Positions 1,039 to 53,635 of a stretch of DNA of 64,000 bases are shown piece after piece. A program made the translations under genes and the position numbers. The stretch's first letter is position 1, and each line of letters opens with the position of its first letter. Under the pieces are notes generated by a model that saw only the letters and a program-made list of their open reading frames with translations, made no database searches and was not told the DNA's origin. The stretch covers positions 1 through 64,000 of the IMG/VR virus record IMGVR_UViG_3300023184_000027. One strand, given 5' to 3'.

Positions 1039-1134
1039 ACTATTAAATACTATTATTTTCCATTATAATGTAATATAACCCAATATTAAGACATTTTTTT
1101 CCACTAAAAGTGGTATTTTGGCAAATATTTTCCA

Positions 1135-1527
1135 CTATTCTATTGTTTTAACAGGAATATTAAAGTTATCCCAAAACCAATCAATAAATGGTTTGTGCCA
1201 TCTATGACCAAATAAACCATTTAATTGGTCTAGTTTATCAGTGTCTTCAAACTCTAATATTGGAGATTTTTCAATCATTTCTTTTAAAAAAACAGGACTT
1301 AAAGTTTCGGTTTCTTCACTACGCCAATAATCCTCACCATACCATCTGAATAGAGTGTTATCGCCACCATCTTCATAATCATCTGTATAGAATTCTATTG
1401 CATAATCAACTTCATTACCCCAATCATCTATGCCTGGTGTCCATCCAATATTATCAACATCAAACATACTATTAATATATTTGAGTATTAAATCATACAC
1501 TTTATCTTCAGTTATTATAATTTTCAT
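1135..1527 (-). CDS. Hypothetical protein, ITE leader + WF..N..PVK C-terminal family
   Basis: MKIIITEDKV; C-terminal WFWDNFNIPVKTIE. Confidence 0.75.
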   Translation of the reverse strand: MKIIITEDKVYDLILKYINSMFDVDNIGWTPGIDDWGNEVDYAIEFYTDDYEDGGDNTLFRWYGEDYWRSEETETLSPVFLKEMIEKSPILEFEDTDKLDQLNGLFGHRWHKPFIDWFWDNFNIPVKTIE

Positions 1528-1538
1528 ATTTATAAATA

Positions 1539-2384
1539 TTAAATTAAATCGGATAAGGGTAAAATATCAATAGAATTATCACCATAATTGGTAACAATAA
1601 CATTAGTATCATTTGACGCTATCCCATGAGGAAAACTAAATCCGGGGATTGTTTTAATAAAACTTAACTTATCGTCGATTAGTTTAAAATGTAATAATGA
1701 ATCTTGAGCTTGTAAGGTTATAAAACCATCCTCACCACTCAAACAAACCGCGTCAGTCTGACCATAAAAAGTTAATTCATCTATTTGTTTTAAACTAGGA
1801 TATTCAAATAAATATAAAATAGAATCGGTCACAGTAACTTTATTTGTCGCCGATGGTCGGCTACTTGAAGATGAGATTAATATTCTATCGTTGATGATTA
1901 AAATATCTTTAGGGTAATGCTTGAAATTATTAAATTGACGAACATAACCACTGTTAATATTCACATAGAAACATCCCCTATATGTATTATTACTTGTATT
2001 AGTAACAATCACATTATCATTATCAATGATTCTACACCCGTGTATTTGGTCTATTTGTTTTTTAACAATATCTTTAACAAAAACAATTTTATTATCAATT
2101 AAATTAAAAATAGAAATAACACCATATCCATTACCGGTTGATATTATTAACCCATCTTTATAATCAATTAAATCAGGACAATAATTTGTGGTAATTTCAT
2201 CTATGATGGTAAAATCGCCATTCTCAATGGTAATTAAATATATTTTTTTATTTAAAAATGATGCCACCAAAATTAAATTATCAGTCACAAATGAAACCGA
2301 TGTTGCCGTCGCATGTCTTTTATTTTGTCCAGCAAAAACTGTTGGGTATTTTTCTAAATTAAAATCCGGTAATTTAAATTTCAT
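1539..2384 (-). CDS. Beta-propeller-like protein (YncE/NHL-like)
   Basis: Repeated beta blades, PHGI/IHG motifs, VTNYGDNSI. Confidence 0.55.
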   Translation of the reverse strand: MKFKLPDFNLEKYPTVFAGQNKRHATATSVSFVTDNLILVASFLNKKIYLITIENGDFTIIDEITTNYCPDLIDYKDGLIISTGNGYGVISIFNLIDNKIVFVKDIVKKQIDQIHGCRIIDNDNVIVTNTSNNTYRGCFYVNINSGYVRQFNNFKHYPKDILIINDRILISSSSSRPSATNKVTVTDSILYLFEYPSLKQIDELTFYGQTDAVCLSGEDGFITLQAQDSLLHFKLIDDKLSFIKTIPGFSFPHGIASNDTNVIVTNYGDNSIDILPLSDLI

Positions 2385-2385
2385 A

Positions 2386-3144: not shown

Positions 3145-3597
3145 TTATATTTCTTCACCAAATAAATCATCTGTCCATCGTTCAGGGACAAGAACCACAA
3201 TATAACCTTTTGTTACATTAACAGCGGATGTTGGTAATAAGTTATTGATTTCTTCTAATAGTTCCTCATTTTCCTTAAAAACGATTCGTAATTTACCATC
3301 TTCAGCGGTATCAACAACTTTATGCTTATTATTTTCCATAATGGACTTGAAGTTTTCAATATCACCAAATTTATCTTCGGTTTCAATATCCAAATCACCA
3401 GTTAAAAATCTTTCAGGGACACTACTTTCACCTCCAGTTTTTAAATATTTAATTTCTTCGTCTGTCATTCCTTCAAGACCAACCTCATTATATAAATCCA
3501 AGATACTATCGTAATAATCGGTATCAAATTGTTCCGTCATAATTAATTTAATAATATCTTTTAATTCAGATTCTGTTAATTTTATAATCTTTGCCAT
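3145..3597 (-). CDS. Acidic hypothetical protein with KLTESEL leader
   Basis: MAKIIKLTESELKDIIKLIMTEQ; ATATTTATA upstream. Confidence 0.7.
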   Translation of the reverse strand: MAKIIKLTESELKDIIKLIMTEQFDTDYYDSILDLYNEVGLEGMTDEEIKYLKTGGESSVPERFLTGDLDIETEDKFGDIENFKSIMENNKHKVVDTAEDGKLRIVFKENEELLEEINNLLPTSAVNVTKGYIVVLVPERWTDDLFGEEI

Positions 3598-3796
3598 AAT
3601 TAGTTTTATCTATAAATATCTAATGAAATCGTTTATCCATTTTATAACACTTTTTTTAATGTTATATAAATTAGATGTGTTAAAAATATTACCGATATTA
3701 AGATAATAAATCCCAATAATATAAGACCTCCGGTTATTAAAAATTTTAAAAAAGTTTCCATATATTAAATTTAATAAAAGTTAAATAACAAATCAA

Positions 3797-3828
3797 TTTG
3801 ATTGTCTCAAAATTAATAATTATATTTG
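3797..3828 (+). promoter_or_regulatory. Bacteroidetes-type sigma-A promoter (-33 TTTG / -7 TAnnTTTG)
   Basis: TTTG-N20-TATATTTG just upstream of ATG 3833. Confidence 0.7.
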
Positions 3829-3832
3829 GGTT

Positions 3833-5056
3833 ATGGAAGAAATAATTAACAAACTAATAAAATATCATATAAAGGGTGTGGATACTTACACTTACAATGA
3901 CTCCACTTGGTTAATCTTTACGAAGACCAAACAATGGGTGATAGAATTAACCGATGGAAAAACTCTATGGTATAATTATAGTTTTTTTAATACCGTATTT
4001 TCTTTTGTATCGTTGGAGGTTGTTCAAAACCAACACCTCATTACAAAATGGGTGGAAGATAATGTGATAAATAAAGTAGAAGACATTTATTTTAGAGATG
4101 CCCGAGATAAAAAACAACAATTTGAAGACACCCTTGAATATGGGGTGAAACGAACCTTAAACGCTGTTGGAGACCCTAAACTTTTAATTGAAGACACTAT
4201 TGAAAATGGGGTGAAAAACATTAGAAATGTAAGGGTTAAACGGTTAGATTCTGTTGAAGACACAATTCAAAATGGGGTTAAGACTACCTACGCTTATCCT
4301 GACACATCCAAAGTTGGTGTTAATGACACCATACAAAATGGTGTGAAGAGTACCAAACCTTATGATTATGAACAAATCCCCGATGTTAATTATGTTATTG
4401 AAAATGGTGTTAAAGAAACACAATTTAACACTTACGAAAATAAAAGTTGGATTGAAGGCATTATTAAAGAAGGTGTAAAACAAACCTTACCTGAAGTGGG
4501 AAAATATATTAACGATGTTGAAGAGGTAATTCAAGAGGGGATAAATCATACTCAACCTCATCTTATAAAAAATAGATATATCGTTGAAGAGGTAATTGAA
4601 GATGGTGTTAAAAGTTCTCACCCACTCCAATATATCTCAAAAGAGATAATTGATGGGGTGGTTAATGATGGTATAATAGAAACCCACGATGATACATACC
4701 ACCACAAAGGAAGAATAGATGGCGTAATTAAGAATGGAGTTAAAGAAACTAAAACAACCGGTAATGATGACCTTACAGCAACTTTTCAATGGATGGATGA
4801 AAATAAAACCGATGATGTTCCCAAAATGATTGATGATATAATTGAGAATGGTATTAAAAAAACAAAACCCGCTAATGGTGACCTTGTATCCGCTATTGAA
4901 TGGATGGATGAAAATAAAACTTTGAATGTCCCCAAAATGATTGATGATATAATTGAGAATGGGGAAAAGATAAATGGAACTTATGCTGGTGGTCAACGTC
5001 AAAGTGAAAAATGTAAATCCGTTGTTGAATATGGAATAAAAAACCCCACCGATTAG
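3833..5056 (+). CDS. Tandem-repeat protein (about 22-aa I.NGVK repeats)
   Basis: About 13 repeats ending IENGVK/IQNGVK; near-exact DNA duplication 4789-4850 vs 4900-4961. Confidence 0.75.
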   Translation: MEEIINKLIKYHIKGVDTYTYNDSTWLIFTKTKQWVIELTDGKTLWYNYSFFNTVFSFVSLEVVQNQHLITKWVEDNVINKVEDIYFRDARDKKQQFEDTLEYGVKRTLNAVGDPKLLIEDTIENGVKNIRNVRVKRLDSVEDTIQNGVKTTYAYPDTSKVGVNDTIQNGVKSTKPYDYEQIPDVNYVIENGVKETQFNTYENKSWIEGIIKEGVKQTLPEVGKYINDVEEVIQEGINHTQPHLIKNRYIVEEVIEDGVKSSHPLQYISKEIIDGVVNDGIIETHDDTYHHKGRIDGVIKNGVKETKTTGNDDLTATFQWMDENKTDDVPKMIDDIIENGIKKTKPANGDLVSAIEWMDENKTLNVPKMIDDIIENGEKINGTYAGGQRQSEKCKSVVEYGIKNPTD

Positions 5057-5197: not shown

Positions 5198-5419
5198 TTA
5201 AATAAGTGTGGCGGCAATATTATCGTCCCACATCCCAAACCCTTCAGCTGAGTTTTCATTAATATAATCCAACACTTCGTGATAACTTTTTCCTTCTAAT
5301 TGAGGAAACTCACTTAAATAAAATGAGATATTAGATGTTAAAGTGATAAGAGACAAACCATCCTCTTCCATTCTTTCAAATTGATTGGGTGTTTGTACAA
5401 TAGTTAATTCTTCTTCCAT
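5198..5419 (-). CDS. Small acidic protein (FPQLEG family)
   Basis: SEFPQLEGKSYHEVLDYINEN resembles 345-686 and 7114-7407. Confidence 0.6.
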   Translation of the reverse strand: MEEELTIVQTPNQFERMEEDGLSLITLTSNISFYLSEFPQLEGKSYHEVLDYINENSAEGFGMWDDNIAATLI

Positions 5420-5479
5420 AATATAGTTTTTTATTATAAATATCTAGATTATTAAAAAAATTGGATTATATGATTTTTA

Positions 5480-5851
5480 TTACCAAGTTCTACACGCCCA
5501 ATATCTCGCTTTCCATCTTGGACCAGGAGTATCACAATTCATTCTTGCTCTAAAAGATTTTCTTCTTGCTGGATTATTCTTTTTGATTACCATTCTTTTA
5601 CCTTTGGCGGATTTTCCTCCAAATCCAAAATTTACCTTAACAACATTTCCTTTGTCGTTCTTAACATACACTTTAAACTTTTTTATATCGCCTTGCATAA
5701 TTTTACCAAGTTGGACTTTTCGTCCCTGATATTCAGCTTCCGTTAGTAAATCACCAACAACAAAGTTGGTTTCCTCAACGGAGCCATAAAAACTATCGTC
5801 TATATTGTTAAATAGTTTTTCGTACTGTGATTCTGTAATTATTAATTTCAT
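5480..5851 (-). CDS. Basic phage protein with ITE leader
   Basis: MKLIITESQY...LLTE then EAEYQGRKV...KVNFG...RKSFRARMNC...ARYWAC, a motif set I recognise from large-phage hypothetical proteins. Confidence 0.75.
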   Translation of the reverse strand: MKLIITESQYEKLFNNIDDSFYGSVEETNFVVGDLLTEAEYQGRKVQLGKIMQGDIKKFKVYVKNDKGNVVKVNFGFGGKSAKGKRMVIKKNNPARRKSFRARMNCDTPGPRWKARYWACRTW

Positions 5852-5946
5852 TTCTTTTCGTAATGAGTCATCGTTGGTTTATTCTCACCTTCGGCTAAAT
5901 AACCCTCCAATATCGTTTCTTGTCTTTCAGTAATTATAAGTTTCAT
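5848..5946 (-). CDS. Leader-only mini-ORF (32 aa, not in ORF track)
   Basis: MKLIITERQETILEGYLAEGENKPTMTHYEKK; stop overlaps next start (ATGA); ATATTTAT upstream. Confidence 0.55.
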   Translation of the reverse strand: MKLIITERQETILEGYLAEGENKPTMTHYEKK

Positions 5947-5966
5947 ATAAATAAATATCCCCCAAT

Positions 5967-6218
5967 TCAAAAAGAGAAGGGGATTACATATAATTTATAT
6001 TTCTCGGAGAACCATTTTCCCACCACTTTATGATAATTTCCTGACCCAAACCAATTTACTAAATCTAAATGAACCTTACCTACTACACCAATTTGATTAA
6101 GACTTTTATGATATATCAAAACACCATTAATACCAATAGATTTTTCACTTTCATACACTTCTCTATTACCATAGGTAAGTTCCAAATATTTTAGTATAAC
6201 TTTTTCTTTCTTATCCAT
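5967..6218 (-). CDS. Small protein of WF.EKY.L family
   Basis: C-terminal WFSEKYKLYV. Confidence 0.7.
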   Translation of the reverse strand: MDKKEKVILKYLELTYGNREVYESEKSIGINGVLIYHKSLNQIGVVGKVHLDLVNWFGSGNYHKVVGKWFSEKYKLYVIPFSF

Positions 6219-6475
6219 TACAAAACCATTAATACCGGTAAATTATACTTCTCTTTAAACCACTCACCCAAATAATCCTGAAATTCTTTTCTTTCAATAC
6301 CAAACATTGCCGAAACCTCGTCAAGTAAATTACCACCATAAAACACAATTTCAGTCTCAGGCGAATATCCAAATCCTTTTTTATTATTGGGTTTTAACCA
6401 ACCAGGGTCGTTAACATCCGGAATTAGTTCCCCATAATAAAACACATCAAAATATTTGAATATTGACTTTTTCAT
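6218..6475 (-). CDS. Small protein of WF.EKY.LPV family
   Basis: C-terminal WFKEKYNLPV; TATCTTTG promoter at 6480-6487 (minus). Confidence 0.7.
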   Translation of the reverse strand: MKKSIFKYFDVFYYGELIPDVNDPGWLKPNNKKGFGYSPETEIVFYGGNLLDEVSAMFGIERKEFQDYLGEWFKEKYNLPVLMVL

Positions 6476-6499
6476 TTGGCAAAGATAATAAAAAAATAT

Positions 6500-6895
6500 T
6501 TACCGACCAAACAATTCAAAAAATTTGTCCTGATTAGTTTTTTCTGGTGGGATAATTAATGATTCAACCTTAAATGTTACAAAGTCCATACCAGTATAGG
6601 TCATCTTAAAATAATCATTTAACATTAATTCATAACTTGTCTTATCACCCAAAACCAAAATATTCTCGTGACAAAATATATTAACACCAACAAGAAATTT
6701 TTTAATAGGTTCAAAATTATGGGGGTCATACATAGTTGTTATCCTAAATCCAGCCGACACAATGTCTCTAATCTCAGGACGAGTCTTTAAGATAACCGAT
6801 TTAAAATTATCAGGTATTTCAATTTCCCTATTTTGTAGAGAGTTCTCGTATAATACCCGAATCTCATCCATACTTAAATTATATTCATTTTCCAT
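6500..6895 (-). CDS. Hypothetical protein
   Basis: ORF co-oriented with neighbours. Confidence 0.6.
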   Translation of the reverse strand: MENEYNLSMDEIRVLYENSLQNREIEIPDNFKSVILKTRPEIRDIVSAGFRITTMYDPHNFEPIKKFLVGVNIFCHENILVLGDKTSYELMLNDYFKMTYTGMDFVTFKVESLIIPPEKTNQDKFFELFGR

Positions 6896-7471: not shown

Positions 7472-7777
7472 TTAATGTTTTATTTGTGTTTGTAAAAAAT
7501 AATTTTCTATTCTTTTCATATCTTCTTCCAATCTTTTAATTCTGGTGGATTGTTCCACATCCATAGGCCAAGCGTTATGTCCGTTAGCACTTTCTTCTAT
7601 CGCCACATTGGTTCTGTCTGATTTATCTTTTAACATTTCATAACTATGTTCCAAGTTAGTTAATCTACCACTAACCTCCGAATACGCCCACACAGCCATA
7701 GAAACAGCTATAACAATTTGAATTAACCACTTAATATTTAAGTTTATTTCCGTTGAATCATTTAATTTATTTTCCAT
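7472..7777 (-). CDS. Membrane-anchored coiled-coil protein
   Basis: N-terminal hydrophobic segment WLIQIVIAVSMAVWAY followed by heptad-like region. Confidence 0.55.
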   Translation of the reverse strand: MENKLNDSTEINLNIKWLIQIVIAVSMAVWAYSEVSGRLTNLEHSYEMLKDKSDRTNVAIEESANGHNAWPMDVEQSTRIKRLEEDMKRIENYFLQTQIKH

Positions 7778-7821
7778 ATATATAAATATTTGAAAAGTAA
7801 ATAGAATTCACTAAATTTAAA

Positions 7822-8792: not shown

Positions 8793-9314
8793 TTAAAATT
8801 TTACTTTTGTTTTGATTGACTCTAAACCTTTACCAATAGCCTCAACCCATTTGTTTTGTCCTTTTAAACTATAGTAGTATTTTCCATTCTCTAACTTATA
8901 ATCATATGACTTATCATTGGTTGTATTTATCTTACTTGTCTGTAATTTACCACTATCTTGTTCCATTACCGATTTAAAACGACCAAGGTCTTTAGTTGTG
9001 ATTTCACCGGCGGAATCATCATGACAATAACCATCCCCTTTCTTACAAACCCAAATTGGAATGTTTTTTTCCTTAAGGTATCTTCCCATAGTATTATTAA
9101 AATCAACATTTGTCCAATTACCATCCAAAGGTAAATTAAGTTTGTAATATTTGTTAAAAAAAGCAGCTAGTTCTTTTGTCTCTTGAGATTTCGGTGAAGA
9201 CAATGCTTGAGGACTTAAAGTTTGCTGTTTTAATGCTTGTTCAGATAACATTTGTTTCTCCAATCTCATATTAGCTTCTTGGATATGTCTGATTTTACTA
9301 AAACTTCTATTCAT
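8793..9314 (-). CDS. Leader-bearing protein, possible peptidoglycan-binding-like domain
   Basis: MNRSFSKIRHIQEAN...LSEQ; L..DG.W motif (LPLDGNW). Confidence 0.5.
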   Translation of the reverse strand: MNRSFSKIRHIQEANMRLEKQMLSEQALKQQTLSPQALSSPKSQETKELAAFFNKYYKLNLPLDGNWTNVDFNNTMGRYLKEKNIPIWVCKKGDGYCHDDSAGEITTKDLGRFKSVMEQDSGKLQTSKINTTNDKSYDYKLENGKYYYSLKGQNKWVEAIGKGLESIKTKVKF

Positions 9315-9347
9315 AATATTATTTTAATATAAATATATCAACATTCC

Positions 9348-9405
9348 AAAAAAAGGGGGCGGGGGGATTTGAATACGACCGGAGGGAGTTCGGGTTATGT
9401 AATAG
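9348..9405 (+). repeat. Intergenic G-rich hairpin repeat, copy 1
   Basis: AAAAAGGGGGCGGGGGGATTTGAATACGACCGGAGGGAGTTCGGGTTATGTAATAG. Confidence 0.85.
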
Positions 9406-9441
9406 GCATAAAAAAACCCACTCGTTAAAGTGGGGTTTAAA

Positions 9442-10572: not shown

Positions 10573-10590
10573 ATTAATAAATATACCATC

Positions 10591-10626
10591 ATTCCAAAAA
10601 AGGGGGAGTTCGGTTTATGTGATGAG
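10591..10626 (+). repeat. Intergenic repeat, internally deleted copy 2
   Basis: ATTCCAAAAAAGGGGGAGTTCGGTTTATGT joins both ends of copy 1 and lacks the hairpin. Confidence 0.7.
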
Positions 10627-11382: not shown

Positions 11383-11451
11383 GTAAATAAATATACATTG
11401 CCAATAAAAAAGGGTCGGTGTGGTATAACACAAATAAAAATTCCCCAGAGT

Positions 11452-11483
11452 ATTGACTGGGAAAATTAAGTTTACTATCTTTG
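11452..11483 (+). promoter_or_regulatory. Bacteroidetes-type promoter
   Basis: ATTG-N20-TATCTTTG upstream of 11503. Confidence 0.6.
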
Positions 11484-13548: not shown

Positions 13549-13617
13549 ACTTATTTCTTTAATAATGACAAAGATAATACAATTTATTTAATTACCAAAT
13601 TTATTTTATTTTTTTTC

Positions 13618-13676: not shown

Positions 13677-13717
13677 ACACATTTGATTCCCCCAATCTTA
13701 TTCACTATATTTAACCC

Positions 13718-16057: not shown

Positions 16058-16082
16058 ATGATATAAATATATTGAAATAATG

Positions 16083-16114
16083 TTTGTGTATGTAATATAT
16101 TATTTGTATCTTTG
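16083..16114 (+). promoter_or_regulatory. Bacteroidetes-type promoter with no downstream ORF
   Basis: TTTG-N20-TATCTTTG. Confidence 0.6.
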
Positions 16115-16119
16115 TACCA

Positions 16120-18382: not shown

Positions 18383-18432
18383 ACATATAAATATAAAAAA
18401 AAGGGAAAATATTACTTTTCCCTCTTTTAATT

Positions 18433-20784: not shown

Positions 20785-20800
20785 AATAATAAATATATTG

Positions 20801-20832
20801 TTTGGTAGAATAGTTTTTATTTCTTATCTTTG
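20801..20832 (+). promoter_or_regulatory. Bacteroidetes-type promoter
   Basis: TTTG-N20-TATCTTTG upstream of 20854. Confidence 0.7.
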
Positions 20833-23076: not shown

Positions 23077-23326
23077 ATAAATAAATATCCCATAAATGAA
23101 AAACCCCCATTAATCTTGGGGGTTATCTTTTTCTTTATTATGTACCACATAAAAATTATGTCCAAAGTGAGGTAAATCAATATTGTCACCAAACCCCAAT
23201 GTCTCAACCATATTTTCAAGGTCTCTATTGGACATCTTATTTAGGACATCCACACCAACCTTTAATAGTATCAGTTCTATAACCTCATCTCTACTAATTT
23301 CTACTGTTGATTTCCACCCCATATTT

Positions 23327-25094: not shown

Positions 25095-25147
25095 AAGGCA
25101 AATATAGGCATAAAAAAAGGAACTACCAAATAGTTCCCTTATTTTTT

Positions 25148-27419: not shown

Positions 27420-27533
27420 ATGTATAAATATAACACGAGAGTAAAAATTACTCCCATCTTTTGAACGAAGGTAATTTTGAGTTTTTTTTACTCTCGTTTA
27501 ATTCTTTTCATTAAATAGTAAATCTTATAAGAA

Positions 27534-33192: not shown

Positions 33193-33253
33193 ATCACTAT
33201 AAATATATCAAAATTAAATAATAGGTTAATATATTTATTATAAAATAACCTTT

Positions 33254-34673: not shown

Positions 34674-35279
34674 TTACCCAATTTTAGGTTGTAGTGGCGG
34701 GTCTAATAAAAATTTATCATTAATCCAATGTCTCAATTCGTTCTCAACAAAATATTCAGGGACTTCCTCGTCTTCTGATTTTTCTGTTGCTAACTCACTA
34801 ATATGTTTAGCGAATTTAATTTTATATTTATCGTCCAACATAGTCATTAATCCGTCAGATATGAAAAATATTTTAGAAAATGGGTCATCTAAATGTATTT
34901 CACCTTCAGCTACTTGGAAAGCCTTTAATATTAATCTACCCCAAAAAGTTTTATAACTTTCTGTTTCAGTTAAACTTGGTCGTAAAAGTTTGTTAACCGC
35001 TCTCATTGTACCGGCAATAATTCCCGGAATCATAAGTTGGGGTAAGAACCACGGCAATAATCTAATAGTTGTTTTTACACCACCTTCACCAACATGCTTA
35101 AACACTCTTCGTTTTGTTGCACTATCAACAATAGCCTTTAATTGTCCAAAAGTTATCTTACCTTGACTACTACAAAATCTCTCACTATCACAAATATTTT
35201 TAATGGTTGTTTTTGACGGATGTACATCTACAGTTTCAAATAATTTAATATATTGGGTTTCATTTACTATAATTCTCAT
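34674..35279 (-). CDS. Leader-bearing protein with hydrophobic segment (start corrected to 35279)
   Basis: MRIIVNETQYIKLFE; GTATTTATA upstream. Confidence 0.7.
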   Translation of the reverse strand: MRIIVNETQYIKLFETVDVHPSKTTIKNICDSERFCSSQGKITFGQLKAIVDSATKRRVFKHVGEGGVKTTIRLLPWFLPQLMIPGIIAGTMRAVNKLLRPSLTETESYKTFWGRLILKAFQVAEGEIHLDDPFSKIFFISDGLMTMLDDKYKIKFAKHISELATEKSEDEEVPEYFVENELRHWINDKFLLDPPLQPKIG

Positions 35280-35310
35280 ATTTATAAATACATTCATACT
35301 TTAAAATAAA

Positions 35311-38712: not shown

Positions 38713-38768
38713 TGATTAATTGTCTCGTTAAATTATAATTATAATGATAAATAGTTAAAACTACAGAA

Positions 38769-39119: not shown

Positions 39120-39143
39120 CATATTTATAATAAAAAACAGATT

Positions 39144-40634: not shown

Positions 40635-40727
40635 AGGATGTTTGTTTTTGTGAGTACAAAGATAAGCCTTTATTTCATATAACCAAACTTTTTATAAAAA
40701 AAAAAAGGAACAAAATGTTCCTTTAAT

Positions 40728-42601: not shown

Positions 42602-42710
42602 ATTCAGTTTATTTATAAATATATCATAAAACAAAAAACCCCCACTATTGTGAGGGTTAATTTTGGACCGACAGATGTCGGCGACTCCACCATCCTATTT
42701 TTAAAGAGAA

Positions 42711-44304: not shown

Positions 44305-44362
44305 ATGTTTTAGTTTCTATGGTACAAAGATAATTCTTTTTTTGATAATACCAAATATATTT

Positions 44363-44617
44363 TTAATATTTTTCAATATTATATGAACCACAGATTCTGT
44401 GCTCTCTATTATACTCATCTTTGAATGTAATACATCCGTTTTTCTCCACATATGTATTAGTGAAAAAATTTGTGTTCTGAGTTCTATTACCCGAAATGGT
44501 AATTTCATAATAGTGACCATTTATTGAGACACGACTTACCATATACATTCTGTGTCCAATAATAACAAATACAAATAAAAAAATAACACCCACCAAAGTC
44601 AATAACTTATTTACCAT
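44363..44617 (-). CDS. Small membrane-anchored early protein
   Basis: N-terminal TM segment; promoter at 44641-44671 (minus). Confidence 0.6.
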   Translation of the reverse strand: MVNKLLTLVGVIFLFVFVIIGHRMYMVSRVSINGHYYEITISGNRTQNTNFFTNTYVEKNGCITFKDEYNREHRICGSYNIEKY

Positions 44618-44778
44618 ATTAATTTAATTTAAATTCCCGACAAAGATAATACTATTATTTATATAAACAAAAAAAACCTCAACAAATTTTACTCTGTTGA
44701 GGTTTTTATTATAACAGCTAAAAAGAAAGGGGGCTGTTGGCTGAATGAATATATAAATATGTTGTAAAATTAGAAAAG

Positions 44779-45204
44779 TTAATCTTTTTTTAACAATCTC
44801 GTAATTAATTTACATAATTGGTCTGATTTATTATCAAATGGTAAGGTATCAAGGTTAAAATATCCACATTCGCTATGTTCATCACCATCAATTGCGTTTT
44901 CTAAATCCGGATTTATTGGTTCGTCTGTTTCCACCATAAAAACATACATCAGTCCTTTAATCTCAGAACCATCACGATTATATCTCTTAACAAATCCAAT
45001 TAATTTTAAATTATTATCTAATGTATAGTTAGTTTCTTCCTTAAATTCTCGTTTCACTCCATCCATAGGGTGTTCCCCCTTTTCCAAATGACCACAAGGA
45101 ATACTCCATTGTCCTGGTAACTCACCTGTCGCATTTCTTTTGCAAAGCAATACCTCATCACCACATTTAACTATTACCCCGGAATATCGTTTAACCTCTT
45201 TCAT
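44779..45204 (-). CDS. Nudix hydrolase
   Basis: Nudix box GHLEKGEHPMDGVKREFKEETN. Confidence 0.9.
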   Translation of the reverse strand: MKEVKRYSGVIVKCGDEVLLCKRNATGELPGQWSIPCGHLEKGEHPMDGVKREFKEETNYTLDNNLKLIGFVKRYNRDGSEIKGLMYVFMVETDEPINPDLENAIDGDEHSECGYFNLDTLPFDNKSDQLCKLITRLLKKD

Positions 45205-45231
45205 TTTATTAAATTTATGATATTTATCTAT

Positions 45232-45573
45232 ATGATTATAAATATAGGTAATTCAGAATTCAAAGTCAAAGTAGTTTTTTCAAAAAAAGATACATCAAAT
45301 GGTATGATGGGTAAAAGATTTGATAAAACTTTTAATGGTATGTTATTTTTAATGTCCGATGGACAACACGGATTTTGGATGAAAGATTGTATAATACCTT
45401 TAGATATAATTTTCATATCCGATAATGTAATTACAAAAATATACCATAACTGCCCACCTTGTAATACCAAAGAATGTAAATCATATATTGGTGAAGGAGA
45501 CACAATTCTTGAAGTTCAAGGGAACACCTGTAAAAAATTAGGTATTAAAATTGGTGATAAAATATCCGCATAA
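45232..45573 (+). CDS. DUF192 family protein
   Basis: GMM...GMLF...FWMKD..IPLDIIFI...PPC...LEV.G. Confidence 0.85.
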   Translation: MIINIGNSEFKVKVVFSKKDTSNGMMGKRFDKTFNGMLFLMSDGQHGFWMKDCIIPLDIIFISDNVITKIYHNCPPCNTKECKSYIGEGDTILEVQGNTCKKLGIKIGDKISA

Positions 45574-47964: not shown

Positions 47965-48324
47965 TTAATCTAACCCCAAGAAATGAATACCTTTATCAAT
48001 AATACTACCTTCTTGAGATACACAACTTTTGAATATTTGAACATCCGAGTCAGGCATTTTACTTTGTGTTGAAGGTCCCCAAATACCGTCCACAGGATAA
48101 ACACCAATTTTAGATTGGTATTTACTCAATGCTTGTTTAACACTATCACCCAAAAGACCATCAACTTTTAGTGGTTGATTCTTATCATCTCTGTGTCCTT
48201 TTTTATTTAAAAAACATTGAATACCCTTCTTTAATTCAGGACTTTCATTTTGTTCAGTAACCAATCCGTATATAGAACGGATGTCACTTTTTTCTTCTTC
48301 GGAAATTATAAATCTTTTTGCCAT
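47965..48324 (-). CDS. Peptidoglycan-binding-domain protein with ISEE leader
   Basis: IQCFLNKKG...VDGLLG...AL..YQ..IG...DGIWGP.T. Confidence 0.8.
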   Translation of the reverse strand: MAKRFIISEEEKSDIRSIYGLVTEQNESPELKKGIQCFLNKKGHRDDKNQPLKVDGLLGDSVKQALSKYQSKIGVYPVDGIWGPSTQSKMPDSDVQIFKSCVSQEGSIIDKGIHFLGLD

Positions 48325-48367
48325 AATAAATCATTTAGTTATAAATATACGGAAAACAAAAAAGAGG

Positions 48368-50275
48368 TTATAACACCTCTTCTTTTAATTCTAATTTTGT
48401 TTGTTTCCTTTCATCAATGAATGCTTGAACTCTTTTCCGAGCAACTTCCGTATAATCCGGAGATAACTCAATTCCAATCCATCGTCTCTCTAACACTTCT
48501 GCCGCCACAGCTGATGTTCCACTTCCCATGAAGGGGTCAAGAACAATATCATCCTTATATGTAAGTATCTTAATCGCCTTCCCTGGTATATCCATACTAA
48601 AGGTCGCCTTGGTTAAGGATTTAGTATCAGCAAAGTATTCCCACCTTCCAAACACCAAGTTCATAAACTCTTTCTTATCCTCATCCTTATAAACCATCTT
48701 ATTTTTGATAGTTCCATCTTCCTGAATTACTTTAGTTGGTTCTCCCGTCCATTGAGATTCACCTTTGAGTAATTTCTTACTTGTCTTCTTATATGCTAAA
48801 ATAATACACTCTTTTGGATTATAGATATAAGGACTTGATGCTGACATCCATGAGTTACCACACCACACTAATTGTCCTGATTTTTCAACTAATAATGTTT
48901 TATTAGGTACTGACACACAATAAACTTTATCATCATAATCAATTGTGGTAACATTTTTTTTCTTTATATAACTTTGTTCTTTGTTGAGGATTTGAATTGT
49001 TGTCATTGGGTAATTAGATTTTATTAATTTACCATTCCAAAGTCTATCTTTTGCAAAATAACTATATAATGAACAAATTCTCCCCGATTCAAATAATAAT
49101 CTAAGAATTTGGTCTTTCATTATTTCACTACATACAGAAATTTTCCACAATTCATTGTCTTTAGTAAAAGACCCATCACCATAAAATATCCATAATAATA
49201 ATATTTCTTTCTGTCTTTTAGACATATTAAAAACATAATCAGGTATTGTTCTTAAATTTTTACTTTTTGTATCAAGTAAAAACGACGCTAATTGTTTTGA
49301 ACAACAAAAATATTCGTTTTTTTGTTTTTTATATTCAAAATTAAATGGTAATCTCTCCAACAATTCTTCAATTTCTTTTAAAAATTTTATTTTTGTTTGA
49401 TAAATAGATATTTTGTATATACCTCGTTTAACATCATATGTTAATGAACCATCTGTTAGAAAAATACCTAAAAATCTCACCCAATCATCCGCATCAACAA
49501 TTACCGAATCTCCATTTCTATATATCTTTTTACTTCTTAACCCATACTCTACAGGAGGTATTACTACAGTTTCTACATCCACAACATTATTTAACCCATT
49601 ATGACTTCTAGGTATTGTGAAAACATCTTGAGTTATCTCATTAAATGGTATAACATCTATTTTAGAGTTGTCTACTCTAACCATATTATGGTTTTCTGTT
49701 ATAGTAAGATTAACCGAACGAGTTTTAATATTTACTAATTTACCTTTAAATGGTTTTTCAATATAATCAAAAGCCTTTTGATACTCAATTTCTTTAGTTG
49801 TAGGATTTAATGTCATAAATAAATCCGTCTTAATATCAACATCTTTAAAAAATTTAAGACCATTATTTGTCATAACTTTAGTTTCATTATCATAACAACC
49901 CCAAGCTGTTTGTCTCACTCTATGTGGAGAATCTTCAGTTAAATCAACCATCCCGTAAAATTTAAAACCAACTTCCTTCATCTTCATCCAAAATTCAGCA
50001 TTGAATAATATTCTTCCACCTCTTTCTTGAACATTCACTTCTATTGGAACATTGATGGCAATTCTTCCGTCATCCTTTAATACTCTATAAGCTTCAGTTA
50101 ACCATTTTGTTGTAAAATCCCAATACTCATCCATTGGAATACTATCGTTATAGACATCGTATTTGATGTTAACCCCGTATGGAGGACTAGTTACAACTAA
50201 ATCAACACAACCTTCAGGAAATGTCTTCATAACCTCAACACACTCACCATTTATAATCTTTCCTGTCTCTATCAT
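48368..50275 (-). CDS. Beta-class N4-C/N6-A DNA methyltransferase containing an intein
   Basis: TSPPY (motif IV) N-terminal, DPFMGSGT (motif I) C-terminal. Confidence 0.9.
   Translation of the reverse strand: MIETGKIINGECVEVMKTFPEGCVDLVVTSPPYGVNIKYDVYNDSIPMDEYWDFTTKWLTEAYRVLKDDGRIAINVPIEVNVQERGGRILFNAEFWMKMKEVGFKFYGMVDLTEDSPHRVRQTAWGCYDNETKVMTNNGLKFFKDVDIKTDLFMTLNPTTKEIEYQKAFDYIEKPFKGKLVNIKTRSVNLTITENHNMVRVDNSKIDVIPFNEITQDVFTIPRSHNGLNNVVDVETVVIPPVEYGLRSKKIYRNGDSVIVDADDWVRFLGIFLTDGSLTYDVKRGIYKISIYQTKIKFLKEIEELLERLPFNFEYKKQKNEYFCCSKQLASFLLDTKSKNLRTIPDYVFNMSKRQKEILLLWIFYGDGSFTKDNELWKISVCSEIMKDQILRLLFESGRICSLYSYFAKDRLWNGKLIKSNYPMTTIQILNKEQSYIKKKNVTTIDYDDKVYCVSVPNKTLLVEKSGQLVWCGNSWMSASSPYIYNPKECIILAYKKTSKKLLKGESQWTGEPTKVIQEDGTIKNKMVYKDEDKKEFMNLVFGRWEYFADTKSLTKATFSMDIPGKAIKILTYKDDIVLDPFMGSGTSAVAAEVLERRWIGIELSPDYTEVARKRVQAFIDERKQTKLELKEEVL
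48854..49897 (-). mobile_element. Intein (348 aa) with LAGLIDADG homing endonuclease
   Basis: WG|CYDNETKV...TENH...FLGIFLTDGS...FYGDGS...VYCVSVPN...WCGN|S. Confidence 0.9.
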
Positions 50276-50797: not shown

Positions 50798-51367
50798 AAT
50801 TTTACCAAATAATATTTACCTAATTTTATACTCTTTCTATAACCCTGTCTAACAGAAAACAATGGTTTTGTTGTTATTTTAAACCCAACCCCACTCTTAC
50901 CTGAAGTAATATAAAACTGACTTTTAGATTTACCTATTAAGAGGGGAAAGTTAAATATTCTAATCACTGTTTGACTACAACCACTACCAATATGATATGT
51001 TTTTTTAGATAACCACATAATAATCTTTCGCTGTTTTACTTTCTACAATAATACCGGATTCTATCAAAAAATCCAGCTCTTTTTTTGTTTCTTCAATATT
51101 CTTTTTAAGAATATACTTTGAAATGTAATTAATGTGGATTGGTTGTCTTAATTTACCAATCAAATTACTAATTTGTTTTTCGTCCATAATTAAGTTTTTC
51201 TTTAATTTTATCTTCAGTCAATCCTTTCATATACCATTTATAAACTTTGGACGATATTTTATCTGATAGAATCAACATATCCGATTTAAACAGCAAAGTT
51301 AATCCTAAATCATTATTAAAACAATTTTTTATTGATTTTTTATCAATTATTTTTTTGTTAAATCCCA

Positions 51368-52138
51368 TTAAGACAATAATCTTTTATTTTGTTTTCCACT
51401 TTGACTTATATACGCTAATATTTTCCTTTTAAAGATTGGTACTAATGTTTCCTCTAACGGAAAAATATCACTACAAAAAACTTCAAATAATGGATGTGAT
51501 TCTTCATTATTCTTTTCATAAGTTTTAGAAAATTTAGATATAATTTGGGGAATTGTCAAATCGTCTTGGATACCTTCGTAAACTAATTTTAACGATGTTT
51601 TAGTTTGATTCTTTGTTTTGTAAATTTTTCTTGTAGTATATTGCCAAATATATAATTTATCCGGTAATTTGTAGTAAAAAAACCCTGACTTGTTTGATAA
51701 ATTATTTTTGTTTTTTTTCATCACAACATCTATGGAATCATAAACAATACTCCAAATAGATTTTGCAAAATTAAAATAGTCGTATAATTGGGGTTGACTA
51801 TTTTTTAAAATTTTTCGGTATTCAATTACTTCTTCGTCCGCTAGCACGGGAATATCTTTAACTTTTAAATCTGAAAAAATTAATTCATCATCTTTTGATG
51901 ATAATTTTTTATCAATATAAAGTATTTTGTTTTGTGTCAATAAGGTTTGCATATTACCCAAATGTAATGAAAGCTCAATAAACATTGGGTAAACCTCCAT
52001 TCTCTCAAGATGTTTATTCATCTTTTGAAAATAGTCTAATAAGACATATTGTTTTTGTTCTGCATCAAGCACACCATCAAATAACCAATCGGTATTCATT
52101 ATAAATGATGTCTTTTTATTTTTTTGTTTCTTTTCCAT
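51368..52138 (-). CDS. Hypothetical protein
   Basis: 256-aa ORF heading the MTase operon. Confidence 0.7.
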   Translation of the reverse strand: MEKKQKNKKTSFIMNTDWLFDGVLDAEQKQYVLLDYFQKMNKHLERMEVYPMFIELSLHLGNMQTLLTQNKILYIDKKLSSKDDELIFSDLKVKDIPVLADEEVIEYRKILKNSQPQLYDYFNFAKSIWSIVYDSIDVVMKKNKNNLSNKSGFFYYKLPDKLYIWQYTTRKIYKTKNQTKTSLKLVYEGIQDDLTIPQIISKFSKTYEKNNEESHPLFEVFCSDIFPLEETLVPIFKRKILAYISQSGKQNKRLLS

Positions 52139-52187
52139 ATATTATTATATTAATTATATGAAAATATATTAAAGAAATGAATAGTTT

Positions 52188-53546
52188 TTAACCAACTCTC
52201 ATAACATAATATCTAGTATTGTTAACAACTACATCATCATATGTACCATCGTATCCATTCATCATACCCCAACCATCATCATCAACTAATCCTTGAGCTA
52301 AAGCATCTTTATCAATATAATCCTCAATACTTAATCCAAAATCACTCATATAAGATGTAATATTATTCTCAACATCTTTTAACATTGAGTCTACCTTATT
52401 ATCAATCATATCTTGGGATGGTTCCATATCAACCTCAATATTATCTAATTCTTCTTGAAGATAGTCTATGTGGTCTTGTGTTTGTTCATATTCTGTTGAG
52501 TCCGAATCATCTATATTTCTTAATCTTTCTTCATATTCTTCAATTTCAGATTCAAGTTGTTCTTTCCTTTCTTCTTGTTCTGAGGTTAACTCAAAATCAT
52601 CATCACTAAAATAGACATCCGGTTCGTTAGATATATCATTTTCATAAAATTCTCTAAAATAATCAAGAACCTCATCTTCGTTAATATAATAATCAATAAA
52701 ACCACTTCTAAACCCCTCAACACCTATTTCATCAATTAAATTTTTTGCGTAATCTAACGCAGAACTTTCCATCTCATCTTCATCACCAACAGAATATTCT
52801 CTACCTTTAAATCCTGGTAGTAAAACCTCAAATTGGGATAAACCATAATAACTGTAATCACCAGGGTACATATCGTAAACATCCGCAACATCTTCTGTTA
52901 ACCCATCAATTTCTTCTTGAACTTCCTCAATAGTATTTAATATTTCAACATTTTCATCGGGGTCACCTTCTCTATCTTCATCTTCATATTGAGCTTCAAG
53001 GTCTTCTTTCTTTTTTATTAATACCGATAATTTTTCTTTATCATCCTCATCTAAAACTTTTACATCACCCTCTTGTTCTAAATATTCTAATAACGCTTGA
53101 GCCTTCATACCTAACTCGTCTTCCTGTTCAAGGTTCCAATCATCACCATCTCTATATTCATTCATTGTTTGTTTCTTATGATTCAATTCCTCCAATTCTC
53201 GTCTTTTTTCTCGAGGTGAACCGTAATCAGTAGTATAACTCTGAACCTTTATATTTGAAATATCAGACACCATAGTATTACTGATATTTAAATAACCATC
53301 AATATAACCAATATTACCTAATGAGGTTGTTGGAGTATTCGCAAGATTTAAGTCATCAGTTATCCATAATGGTTTTCCTCCAAATTTTTTAAGATTCGTT
53401 ATAGCTTTTCCATTATAACTAGTTAAAACCATTAAATCCGTATATTCTTTAGGCGTCATTTTATAATAATCGTCCTCAACTTGTTCAACAATTGTTTTAA
53501 TAAAACGAAATAACCCTTCTTCTGTAAGTCTAATTTTTCTGCTCAT
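52188..53546 (-). CDS. Very acidic coiled-coil protein with RLTEE leader
   Basis: MSRKIRLTEEGL...IVEQ; GTATTTATA upstream. Confidence 0.75.
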   Translation of the reverse strand: MSRKIRLTEEGLFRFIKTIVEQVEDDYYKMTPKEYTDLMVLTSYNGKAITNLKKFGGKPLWITDDLNLANTPTTSLGNIGYIDGYLNISNTMVSDISNIKVQSYTTDYGSPREKRRELEELNHKKQTMNEYRDGDDWNLEQEDELGMKAQALLEYLEQEGDVKVLDEDDKEKLSVLIKKKEDLEAQYEDEDREGDPDENVEILNTIEEVQEEIDGLTEDVADVYDMYPGDYSYYGLSQFEVLLPGFKGREYSVGDEDEMESSALDYAKNLIDEIGVEGFRSGFIDYYINEDEVLDYFREFYENDISNEPDVYFSDDDFELTSEQEERKEQLESEIEEYEERLRNIDDSDSTEYEQTQDHIDYLQEELDNIEVDMEPSQDMIDNKVDSMLKDVENNITSYMSDFGLSIEDYIDKDALAQGLVDDDGWGMMNGYDGTYDDVVVNNTRYYVMRVG

Positions 53547-53635
53547 AATTATAAATACCCAAAATTAAAAAAAAATCTTTACATATTACTATTATAACAG
53601 ATATTTATTGATATAAACATTTAAAAAATTTTATC

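What the first reader, a model, noticed from the sequence alone, without database searches (positions are those of the whole stretch)
1041..53610. Second promoter class RTATTTAT marks the leader genes (putative late promoter)
Seen: (A/G)TATTTA(T/A) on the coding strand a few to about 35 nt before the start codon at 1041, 1531, 3611, 5435, 5951, 7781, 9328, 10577, 11387, 16062, 18387, 20788, 23081, 27424, 33198, 33231, 35283, 38747, 39121, 42614, 45220, 48340, 53550 and 53601. A separate gene set carries TTTG-N19/20-TAnnTTTG (3797, 11452, 13569, 16083, 20801, 25099, 40657, 44325, 44641). Established: the latter is the Bacteroidetes housekeeping promoter, and the T4 late promoter is TATAAATA, of which TATTTATA is the reverse complement. 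Inference: a phage-specific late promoter that splits the window into early genes and late virion-cargo genes.
Basis: partly seen in the sequence, partly recalled or inferred. Interest (0 to 1): 0.6.

Follow-up and report, generated by a model that had tools for sequence, protein, structure and literature searches.

The report
Phage-specific ATATTTAT promoter, often leaderless
A sharply defined 8-base signal (ATATTTAT) sits at a fixed short distance in front of the first gene of many transcription units in this uncultured jumbo phage of Bacteroidota. It is most likely a phage-specific promoter read with a phage-encoded sigma factor, and it is placed so that many messages would begin exactly at their start codon.

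Summary
The motif sharpens to [A/C/G]TATTTAT on the coding strand. In the 208-kb contig, 31 of 88 ATATTTAT copies lie in the sense -45..-1 windows of genes (2.3% of the search space), against 4 antisense. One-mismatch variants are not enriched.

Spacing to the ATG is bimodal: exactly 4 nt (12 window sites against 0.8 expected) or about 12-18 nt, with a conserved A 5 nt after the motif. That matches the -12..-5 position of the Bacteroidota sigma-A box and implies leaderless mRNAs.

The motif marks transcription-unit leaders, often directly after terminators. It lacks a -33 element, is invariant upstream of orthologues in relatives, and is not enriched in cellular Bacteroidota DNA.

Host-type TTTG/TAnnTTTG promoters are also real, and they drive the phage's RpoD-like sigma gene. 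Complete relatives (308-322 kb) also encode a second, divergent sigma with weak similarity to T4 gp55, and the motif follows that gene directly. No phage RNA polymerase was found.

"Late" is plausible but untested, because the motif also precedes DnaB/RNR and a methylase. "Virion cargo" and the T4 reverse-complement argument are unsupported.

The parts
1532..1539 (-). class B motif ATATTTAT, 4 nt before ATG of 1135-1527
1043..1050 (-). variant GTATTTAA, 4 nt before ATG of 727-1038
3612..3619 (-). class B motif, 14 nt before ATG of 3145-3597
5436..5443 (-). class B motif, 16 nt before ATG of 5198-5419
5951..5958 (-). class B motif, 4 nt before ATG of an uncalled 32-aa ORF (about 5848-5946)
7782..7789 (-). 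class B motif, 4 nt before ATG of 7472-7777
9329..9336 (-). class B motif, 14 nt before ATG of 8793-9314; follows a C-rich, T-run cassette
10577..10584 (-). class B motif, 4 nt before ATG of 9442-10572; conserved at the orthologue in L010
11387..11394 (-). class B motif, 4 nt before ATG of 10627-11382
16063..16070 (-). class B motif, 5 nt before ATG of 15608-16057
18387..18394 (-). class B motif, 4 nt before the re-called ATG at 18382; abuts the terminator hairpin 18397-18428
20789..20796 (-). class B motif, 4 nt before ATG of 20011-20784
23081..23088 (-). class B motif, 4 nt before ATG of 22675-23076; follows a terminator
27424..27431 (-). class B motif, 4 nt before ATG of 27042-27419
33199..33206 (-). 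class B motif, 6 nt before ATG of 31600-33192
33231..33238 (+). class B motif, 15 nt before ATG of 33254-33844 (divergent pair with the previous site)
35284..35291 (-). class B motif GTATTTAT, 4 nt before the re-called ATG at 35279
35278..35285 (+). class B motif, 25 nt before ATG of 35311-36138
38747..38754 (-). class B motif CTATTTAT, 34 nt before ATG of 38173-38712
39121..39128 (+). class B motif, 15 nt before ATG of 39144-39842
42615..42622 (-). class B motif, 13 nt before ATG of 42287-42601; follows a terminator
45220..45227 (+). class B motif, 4 nt before the re-called ATG at 45232
45238..45245 (-). class B motif, 33 nt before ATG of 44779-45204
48341..48348 (-). class B motif, 16 nt before ATG of 47965-48324; follows a terminator
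53551..53558 (-). class B motif GTATTTAT, 4 nt before ATG of 52188-53546
3797..3828 (+). host-type class A promoter (TTTG-N-TATATTTG), 4 nt before ATG of 3833-5056
6480..6511 (-). class A promoter (TTTG ... TATCTTTG), 4 nt before ATG of 6218-6475
11453..11483 (+). class A promoter (TTG-N20-TATCTTTG), 19 nt before ATG of 11503-11934
13569..13599 (-). class A promoter upstream of 12034-13548
16083..16114 (+). class A promoter with no ORF behind it; candidate small RNA with a terminator at about 16160-16200
20801..20832 (+). class A promoter, 21 nt before ATG of 20854-21633
25099..25130 (-). class A promoter, 4 nt before ATG of 24582-25094
40657..40687 (-). class A promoter, 22 nt before ATG of 39882-40634
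44325..44355 (-). class A promoter, 20 nt before ATG of 44029-44304
44641..44671 (-). class A promoter, 23 nt before ATG of 44363-44617

Best explanation
[A/C/G]TATTTAT is the -10-type core, and apparently the only element, of a phage-specific promoter class. It would be read by host core RNA polymerase carrying a phage-encoded sigma-70-family factor.

**Geometry.** The 8-mer occupies about -12 to -5, and transcription starts at the conserved A five nucleotides downstream.
- Where that A is the A of the ATG (spacing exactly 4 nt, about 40% of sites including the 5-6 nt spacings), the mRNA is leaderless.
- Elsewhere a short A-rich leader of about 8-14 nt follows.

**Proposed cascade.**
- Unmodified host sigma-A holoenzyme reads the TTTG/TAnnTTTG promoters. 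These include the promoter of the phage's RpoD-like sigma (sigma1, contig 82431-83231).
- The ATATTTAT class then needs a phage factor.
- The most likely reader is the second, divergent sigma (sigma2, 249 aa, weakly gp55-like). It is present in complete relatives and lies just beyond the end of this contig.
- Sigma1 keeps the host's -7 and -33 recognition helices, so it probably reads the host-type class.

**Shown:** the motif, its geometry, its link to transcription-unit starts, its conservation, its absence from host DNA, and the sigma genes.

**Inferred:** the TSS, which sigma reads the motif, and the timing (post-early, that is middle and/or late).
For: - **Strict motif with position and strand bias.**
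- **Bimodal spacing.** A spike at 4 nt, almost nothing at 7-11 nt, then 12-18 nt. The same pattern holds in the contig and in the complete relative G001.
- **Conserved A at +5.** Present in 28 of 34 non-leaderless sites, against 34% in background copies of the motif.
- **Register matches a mapped host box.** The F. psychrophilum sigma-A box lies at -12..-5 from mapped TSSs (PMC9723704). So N4-ATG places +1 on the ATG. Host-type TAnnTTTG-N4-ATG also occurs in the phage and in cellular Bacteroidota.
- **Linked to transcription-unit leaders, not cistrons.** 42 of 110 leaders against 7 of 104 internal genes, p = 3e-8. This argues against a translation signal.
- **Terminators.** Terminator-like hairpins are enriched and several abut the motif.
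- **No -33 element.** 42 of 50 sites have none.
- **Phylogenetic footprint.** ATATTTAT is invariant in 22 distinct orthologous upstream regions whose flanks vary. In 81 relative loci, 160 of 441 copies are sense-upstream against 21 for the reverse complement.
- **Not used by hosts.**
- **No phage RNA polymerase found.** None in the contig or in 5 complete relatives.
- **Sigma1.** It is RpoD-like, its promoter is a conserved host-type one, and its 2.3/2.4 and 4.2 helices are nearly identical to Bacteroidota sigma-A.
- **Sigma2 is a sigma.** 26 of 69 family members hit Sigma70_r2. Its profile hits SigA at E = 1e-3 and gp55 at E = 0.1. The AF2 model has pLDDT 91 and its fold hits are almost all sigma factors. 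It matches phrog_234 in 4 of 4 complete relatives.
- **Motif position at sigma2.** VTATTTAT lies directly after the sigma2 gene in G001 and in 5 of 6 contigs whose sigma2 is only 30-49% identical.
- **Distribution of host-type promoters.** Strong ones are absent from the 120-240 kb region of large structural and replication genes in G001, while class B occurs throughout.
Against: - **No transcript 5' ends.** The only RNA run holds assembled contigs of 90-95% relatives. The TSS and timing are therefore inferred.
- **Sigma2 is not on this contig.** Its gp55 similarity is weak, no gp45-type clamp was detected, and no gp33 was sought.
- **The sigma assignment is indirect.** Giving class B to sigma2 rather than sigma1 rests on conserved recognition helices and on gene-neighbourhood co-occurrence.
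- **The two motifs are close in sequence.** ATATTTAT is two substitutions from TATCTTTG. At the methylase promoter, orthologues carry TAnnTTTG-type boxes with a conserved -33 where this phage reads TTATATTTAT. So host sigma-A may read at least some sites.
- **Not strictly late genes.** The motif also precedes DnaB/RNR and a methylase.
- **Unexplained leaders.** 51 of 110 leader genes have neither class. Several of them show degenerate variants such as TATTTAA.
Confidence: 0.6

Rival explanations
1. The motif is a -33-independent variant of the ordinary Bacteroidota -7 box (tATATTTAt against TAnnTTTG). Host sigma-A, or the host-like phage sigma1, reads it. Under this view it is not a separate temporal class, only a second flavour of early or constitutive promoter.
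For: - The motif is two substitutions from TATCTTTG.
- At the methylase promoter, orthologues swap between the two forms while keeping the -33.
- The register relative to the ATG is the same.
- Both classes have a T-rich spacer.
- Sigma1 keeps the host recognition helices but has a diverged region 1.2, which could shift preference at -6/-5.
Against: - One-mismatch variants, including other TAnnTTTA forms, are not enriched, unlike the degenerate nn of the host box.
- The motif is not enriched upstream of genes in 1.35 Mb of cellular Bacteroidota DNA, where TAnnTTTG is enriched 6-fold.
- 42 of 50 sites have no -33.
- The six TSS-derived motif classes of F. psychrophilum do not include it.
Confidence: 0.25
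2. The motif acts at the RNA or translation level, as a ribosome-recruitment element, translation enhancer or RNase processing site, rather than as a promoter.
For: - It lies at a fixed 4-nt distance from the ATG at 16 sites.
- Bacteroidota lack Shine-Dalgarno use and rely on AT-rich upstream sequence (PMC6847099, listed).
Against: - It is present at transcription-unit leaders but at only 7 of 104 internal cistrons.
- The second spacing mode is variable, from 12 to more than 30 nt.
- It sits directly after terminators, where a new transcript must begin.
- No comparable signal exists in host genes.
Confidence: 0.05
3. The pattern is an artefact of AT-rich intergenic sequence or of duplicated intergenic cassettes.
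For: - The genome is 30% GC and intergenic DNA is 26% GC.
- Three adjacent paralogous genes share an upstream cassette.
Against: - 0 of 100 dinucleotide shuffles reach the observed N4-ATG count.
- Same-composition 8-mers and one-mismatch variants are not enriched.
- The strand bias is 31 to 4.
- The 50 sites form 49 independent flank clusters.
Confidence: 0.01

Closest known systems
Bacteriophage T4 late promoters (TATAAATA at about -13..-6) read by gp55, with gp33 and the gp45 clamp
   Same: - A nearly invariant AT-rich 8-mer in the -10 region.
- No -35-type element.
- Many copies in front of individual genes across the genome.
- A small, divergent phage sigma with region-2 similarity. Relatives' sigma2 weakly matches the gp55 family.
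   Different: - The sequence is ATATTTAT, not TATAAATA, on the coding strand.
- Sigma2 is longer (249 against 185 aa) and models with a C-terminal helical domain.
- No gp45-type clamp was detected.
- The motif also precedes DnaB/RNR and a methylase.
- Late timing and dependence on replication are untested.
- A large share of the sites imply leaderless mRNAs.
Bacteroidota primary sigma (sigma-AB) promoters: -33 TTTG and -7 TAnnTTTG
   Same: - The same register, with the box at -12..-5 (PMC9723704).
- A TTT core and a T-rich spacer.
- Two substitutions separate the motifs.
- Both are used by this phage, and both can sit 4 nt from the ATG.
   Different: - No -33 element.
- The final G is replaced.
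- The nn positions are fixed.
- It is not enriched in host DNA.
Promoter boxes at a fixed distance from start codons in leaderless-rich prokaryotes (Deinococcus, Actinobacteria, archaea)
   Same: A -10-type box at a fixed short distance from the AUG, implying that the TSS coincides with the start codon (PMC4007540 and PMC3160421, listed).
   Different: - It occurs here in a phage of a phylum where leaderless mRNAs are rare: 5.5% in F. psychrophilum, and 3.7% with a 5' UTR under 10 nt in B. thetaiotaomicron.
- It is tied to a phage-specific motif.
Sigma cascades of large phages (SPO1 gp28, then gp33/34; sigma factors reported in huge phages)
   Same: The phage encodes its own sigma-70-family factors and no RNA polymerase. 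A host-type promoter drives a phage sigma gene.
   Different: The promoter specificities and order of action are not established here. One of the two sigmas looks like a copy of the host primary sigma.

Membership tests
T4-type late promoter / gp55 system | Consensus TATAAATA on the non-template strand in the -10 region | tested here: not met
   The coding-strand consensus is [ACG]TATTTAT. Its reverse complement resembles the T4 box, but on the wrong strand.
T4-type late promoter / gp55 system | -10-only architecture with no -35 element | tested here: met
   42 of 50 sites have no TTG/TTTG at -33, the same as background copies. There is no information content upstream apart from T-richness.
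T4-type late promoter / gp55 system | gp55-family sigma encoded by the phage | tested here: inconclusive
   - Not on this 71%-complete contig.
- In 4 of 4 complete relatives, a 249-aa ORF matches phrog_234 at E = 6e-5 to 5e-3.
- The family is a sigma by Pfam (26 of 69 members), by profile and by fold.
- The specific gp55 link is weak (E = 0.1 to 7d7c_F).
T4-type late promoter / gp55 system | gp33 co-activator and gp45 sliding-clamp dependence | tested here: inconclusive
   PF02916 (gp45 N-terminal domain) was not found in the contig or in two complete relatives. gp33 was not searched. Functional dependence cannot be tested here.
T4-type late promoter / gp55 system | Late, replication-coupled expression | not testable with these tools
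   Only assembled metatranscriptome contigs of relatives were available.
Bacteroidota sigma-A promoter | -7 box TAnnTTTG | tested here: not met
   The final G is absent. ATATTTGT scores 0 of 50 upstream, and other TAnnTTTA forms are not enriched.
Bacteroidota sigma-A promoter | -33 TTTG | tested here: not met
Bacteroidota sigma-A promoter | Used upstream of host genes | tested here: not met
   In 79 cellular Bacteroidota loci, VTATTTAT has 12 of 343 copies upstream (not significant) against TAnnTTTG with 180 of 1183.
Leaderless-mRNA promoter arrangement | -10-type box at a fixed distance so that +1 is the A of the AUG | tested here: met
   16 sites have exactly 4 nt (12 in the window against 0.8 expected). 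This matches the mapped -12..-5 box position in a flavobacterium.
Leaderless-mRNA promoter arrangement | Primary 5' end mapped at the start codon | not testable with these tools
   No raw RNA reads for this phage.
E. coli-type sigma-70 promoter (TTGACA-N17-TATAAT) | Enrichment of bipartite consensus matches | tested here: not met
   112 matches found against 123.5 expected in 1-20 kb. TTGACA is only about 2-fold enriched upstream in G001, partly because it is the tail of TATCTTTGACA.

The most novel reading that the evidence does not exclude
A very abundant, uncultured clade of Bacteroidota jumbo phages (about 320 kb) uses a divergent sigma, only weakly gp55-like, to read a strict -10-only promoter (ATATTTAT). 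The promoter is deliberately placed so that about 40% of its transcripts are perfectly leaderless. This would couple a switch in transcription with a switch in the mode of translation initiation, in a phylum where leaderless mRNAs are otherwise rare. It could, for example, favour phage messages after host takeover.
Probability: 0.25. Interest if true: 0.7.

Novelty: new variant of a known kind. Interest (0 to 1): 0.55.

Why it matters
**A usable regulatory code for an uncultured clade.** These jumbo phages are widespread: more than 360 IMG/VR contigs carry the sigma1 orthologue and more than 7,900 metagenomic proteins match sigma2. There are two promoter classes that can be scanned by sequence alone. 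That allows correct start-codon calling (three starts in the window had to be moved and one small ORF added), definition of operons, and prediction of the early set against the phage-sigma-dependent set.

**Directly testable hypotheses.**
- A sigma cascade with one host-like and one divergent sigma.
- An unusually high use of leaderless mRNAs in Bacteroidota.

**Practical use.** A short, strict promoter orthogonal to the host, paired with its sigma, would be a useful expression part for Bacteroidota, which are hard to engineer.

Tried and rejected
- **EM motif refinement.** Seeded on ATATTTAT, it drifted into the generic A-rich leader. I replaced it with exact and one-mismatch counting.
- **Direct TSS evidence.** The only RNA run is a marine metatranscriptome kept as contigs. 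It holds 90-95% relatives, has no informative 5' ends, and gives no strand or level information.
- **Phage RNA polymerase.** No hit to Rpb2_6, Rpb1_2 or T7-type RNAP in the contig, and no Rpb1_2 hit in five complete relatives. PF00940 rang nowhere, including the control genomes, so it is uninformative.
- **Third promoter class.** After masking both classes, only A-rich leader words remain. AATAAATA has no positional preference. TTGACA is weakly enriched, with only two clean TTGACA-N17-TATACT cases. Inspecting the 45 unexplained leaders by eye showed mostly degenerate class B-like variants.
- **Function of the window genes behind the motif.** Pfam and PHROGs gave nothing useful. The "virion cargo" idea could therefore not be tested.
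- **Sigma2 identification.** The four-sequence profile found nothing in PDB sequences. The JGI label "SprT family metalloprotease" for sigma2 homologues is not supported by Pfam, profile or fold results.
- **Distant sigma2 phages in IMG/VR.** I used the look-up of encoding contigs instead.
- **Other negatives.** A gp45-type clamp was not found. 'relatives' is not available for a virus record. Rfam found nothing in the window. No paper in the searched library describes this motif.

Full report
**Context.** The window is the first 64 kb of a 207,952-bp linear IMG/VR contig with 30% GC, estimated about 71% complete.
- It is a jumbo myovirus. It encodes a tail sheath, two giant collagen-like tail fibres, a family-B DNA polymerase, RNR, a DnaB helicase, a primase and SbcC.
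- DNA similarity to deposited phages is limited to two uncultured phages of about 640 kb.
- Its RNR's closest cellular relatives are all Bacteroidota, and it uses Bacteroidota-type promoters. The host is therefore almost certainly a member of that phylum.
- The only RNA run that held part of the sequence is labelled as a marine metagenome.
- Complete relatives are 308-322 kb, two of them with terminal repeats. One of them, G001, is syntenic at 85-95% nucleotide identity. I fetched it whole as a reference.

- Of the 24 listed positions, 22 carry [A/C/G]TATTTAT on the coding strand shortly before an ORF start. One is the variant GTATTTAA and one (53601) is doubtful.
- The total number of ATATTTAT copies in the window is only modestly above shuffles (36 against 23). 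The signal lies in where the copies are.
- In the whole contig, 31 of 88 copies lie in the sense -45..-1 windows of genes, which make up 2.3% of the two-strand search space. Only 4 lie in the antisense orientation.
- The motif is unusually sharp. None of the 24 one-mismatch variants shows comparable enrichment. Only the first position tolerates A, C or G. Same-composition 8-mers are not enriched.
- VTATTTAT-N4-ATG occurs 12 times in the window against 0.81 expected, with 0 of 100 shuffles reaching that count. Every one is at an ORF start.
- The 50 functional sites of the contig fall into 49 independent flank clusters, so duplication does not explain them.

**Geometry.**
- The distance from the motif to the ATG is bimodal. 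There is a spike at exactly 4 nt: 12 called starts plus 4 starts I had to re-call. A few sites lie at 5-6 nt, none at 7-11 nt, and a broad mode lies at 12-18 nt. G001 shows the same shape.
- The base 5 nt after the motif is A in all N4 sites. It is also A in 28 of 34 other sites, against 34% in non-functional copies.
- In Flavobacterium psychrophilum, where TSSs were mapped, the sigma-A box TAnnTTTG lies at -12 to -5 (PMC9723704).
- An 8-mer followed by four bases and then the ATG therefore puts +1 on the A of the start codon.
- The host-type boxes of this phage show the same N4/N5-ATG arrangement at 3797, 6511, 25130 and 93748. Cellular Bacteroidota loci show it too (a peak of 19 at N4).
- The simplest reading is a promoter whose transcripts are either leaderless or carry a short A-rich leader. 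The empty 7-11 nt range corresponds to leaders of about 3-7 nt. I infer that such leaders may be too short to serve either mode of translation initiation.
- About 40% of class B sites are of the leaderless type. By comparison, leaderless mRNAs are 5.5% in F. psychrophilum, and 3.7% of B. thetaiotaomicron 5' UTRs are shorter than 10 nt.

**Transcription signal or translation signal?**
- The motif marks the first gene of transcription units. In the window, 21 of 49 leader genes carry it against 4 of 45 internal genes (p = 2e-4). In the contig the figures are 42 of 110 against 7 of 104 (p = 3e-8).
- A translation element would be needed at internal cistrons too.
- Terminator-like hairpins are three-fold enriched (31 against 10.5). 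Several are followed immediately by the motif, for example the hairpin at 18397-18428 followed by ATATTTAT.
- E. coli-type -35/-10 matches are not enriched.

**Relation to the host promoter.**
- The TTTG-N19/20-TAnnTTTG class is real, with consensus near TTTGG...TTATCTTTGTA. In the window it drives 10 leader genes, interleaved with class B units on the same strand.
- Class B lacks the -33 element (42 of 50 sites have none) and replaces the final G.
- The two boxes are close in sequence. At the methylase gene (contig 72380-73234), this phage and its nearest relative read TTATATTTAT. Other orthologues read TTATCTTTGT, TTATATTTGT or TTATACTTT, all with a conserved -33 CTTGC.
- As a control I analysed 79 loci (1.35 Mb, 1,184 genes) of cellular Bacteroidota. 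TAnnTTTG is enriched about six-fold upstream of genes (180 of 1183, against 46 antisense). VTATTTAT is not enriched (12 of 343, not significant) and shows no N4 peak.
- Class B is therefore phage-specific.

**Conservation.**
- In 81 loci from relatives (1.48 Mb), 160 of 441 ATATTTAT copies are sense-upstream, against 21 for the reverse complement.
- Upstream of the orthologues of contig gene 76886-78154, the 8-mer is invariant in 22 distinct sequences whose flanks vary.
- In a 308-kb relative, the orthologue of window gene 9442-10572 and its neighbours all carry ATATTTAT-N4-ATG.

**Who reads it?** No RNA polymerase gene was found in the contig or in five complete relatives, so host core enzyme is implied.
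- **Sigma1.** The contig encodes a 266-aa sigma with regions 1.2, 2 and 4, most similar to RpoD/RpoS.
  - Its operon is preceded by a conserved host-type promoter, TAtcTTTGTAACA, often with a -33 TTTGG, in 32 distinct orthologous sequences. It should therefore be made early.
  - Aligned with the primary-type sigmas of five Bacteroidota genomes (42-50% identity), it keeps their characteristic -10 recognition segment (FISYAVWW[I/V][R/K]QSI) and their region 4.2 helix (LT[K/R]ERVRQIKE). It has a diverged region 1.2 and a deletion of about 24 residues in region 3.
  - I infer that it reads the host-type class or something close to it.
- **Sigma2.** Complete relatives carry a second candidate, a 249-aa protein at G001 229117-229866, just beyond the end of this contig.
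  - It gives weak hits to Sigma70_r2 and to PHROG 234, "late sigma transcription factor", the T4 gp55 family.
  - Of 69 diverse family members, 26 match Sigma70_r2 on their own, with best E = 5e-7.
  - The family profile finds SigA chains at E = 1e-3 and gp55 (7d7c_F) at E = 0.1.
  - An AlphaFold model (pLDDT 90.9) retrieves almost only sigma factors, though with weak scores.
  - VTATTTAT lies directly after this gene in G001 and in five of six contigs whose sigma2 is only 30-49% identical. One of those is again in the N4-ATG arrangement.
- A strict 8-mer without an upstream element is what a minimal, gp55-like sigma would be expected to use.

**Timing.**
- Class A promoters with a -33 are absent from the 120-240 kb region of G001, which holds the large structural and replication genes. 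Class B occurs throughout.
- In the contig, class B precedes the tail sheath, two large neighbouring genes, DnaB (followed downstream by the RNR genes) and a methylase. Class A precedes the primase and the sigma1 operon.
- This fits "host-read early" against "phage-sigma-dependent", but not a strict "late = virion" split.
- The window genes behind class B have no recognisable function, so "virion cargo" cannot be supported.

**Verdict.** The finding is a real, sharply defined, conserved and phage-specific promoter-like element.
- The late timing, the cargo label and the reverse-complement argument are not supported by evidence.
- The closest known analogue is the T4 late promoter system in architecture, and the Bacteroidota -7 box in register and sequence neighbourhood.
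- It differs from the T4 system by its sequence and from the Bacteroidota box by its lack of a -33 element.
- It differs from both by the frequent leaderless placement.
- I found no description of it in the searched literature.

Noticed in passing
window 16083-16200 (+), and the ORF-poor stretch 16562-17456: A strong host-type promoter (TTTG-N20-TATCTTTG) with no ORF behind it. About 45 nt downstream lies a GC-rich hairpin (GGTTGGA...TCCAACC) followed by a T-run, which suggests a small RNA of about 75 nt. Rfam has no match. The next 0.9 kb has no ORF of 60 aa or more.
   Followed up: partly
window 48368-50275 (-): A 635-aa N6/N4 DNA methylase interrupted by weak, sub-threshold Pfam matches to an intein splicing domain and to LAGLIDADG homing-endonuclease domains.
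   Followed up: no
window 8793-11394 (-) and 13600-13700; L010: - A paralogous gene family (N-termini MK[F/I]IITE...) is preceded by a repeated cassette: CCGAACTCCCTCCGGTCG..., a run of C, a T-run, and then ATATTTAT.
- Metatranscriptome contigs of relatives join different cassettes (joints 10583>7007 and 9370>7009), which suggests gene shuffling at these cassettes.
   Followed up: partly
L114-L193 (cellular Bacteroidota loci): TAnnTTTG-to-ATG spacing shows a sharp peak at 4 nt (19 of 180 upstream boxes). So leaderless placement of the host box also occurs in cellular genomes. Some of these loci are orthologous, so the count is not independent.
   Followed up: no
contig 82431-83231 (-) = L009:1081-1881: The phage RpoD-like sigma has the small Bacteroidota architecture with no region 1.1. 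It also lacks about 24 residues of region 3 and has a diverged region 1.2, while its regions 2.3/2.4 and 4.2 are almost host-identical. It may be a host-sigma replacement, for example one insensitive to a phage anti-sigma.
   Followed up: partly
G001 229117-229866 (L102:9117-9866) and P0001-P0270: - The divergent sigma2 family is very large: 7,985 proteins at E <= 0.001 among the 8,000 candidates scored, and 1,241 cluster representatives at 50% identity at the same E-value cut-off.
- JGI records often label its members "SprT family Zn-dependent metalloprotease". Pfam, profile and fold results do not support that label.
- Synteny is conserved: glycosyltransferase, sigma2, class B motif, a protein of about 125 aa, then a protein of about 480-640 aa.
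   Followed up: partly
window 54713-57736 (-) and 57749-64000 (-): A 1,007-aa protein with Fib_succ_major and DUF285 repeats sits next to a 2,459-aa collagen-like tail fibre. The fibre's gene region is much more GC-rich (46%) than the rest of the genome (30%).
   Followed up: no
window 19369-19415: A long, nearly perfect inverted repeat (20-bp stem, AT-rich) in the 312-nt divergent intergenic region between 18716-19282(-) and 19595(+).
   Followed up: no
L202 8380-8610: In a distant sigma2-bearing phage contig, a 76-aa gene three genes upstream of sigma2 has a weak Acb2/Tad1-hairpin Pfam hit, a family of anti-defence sponges.
   Followed up: no
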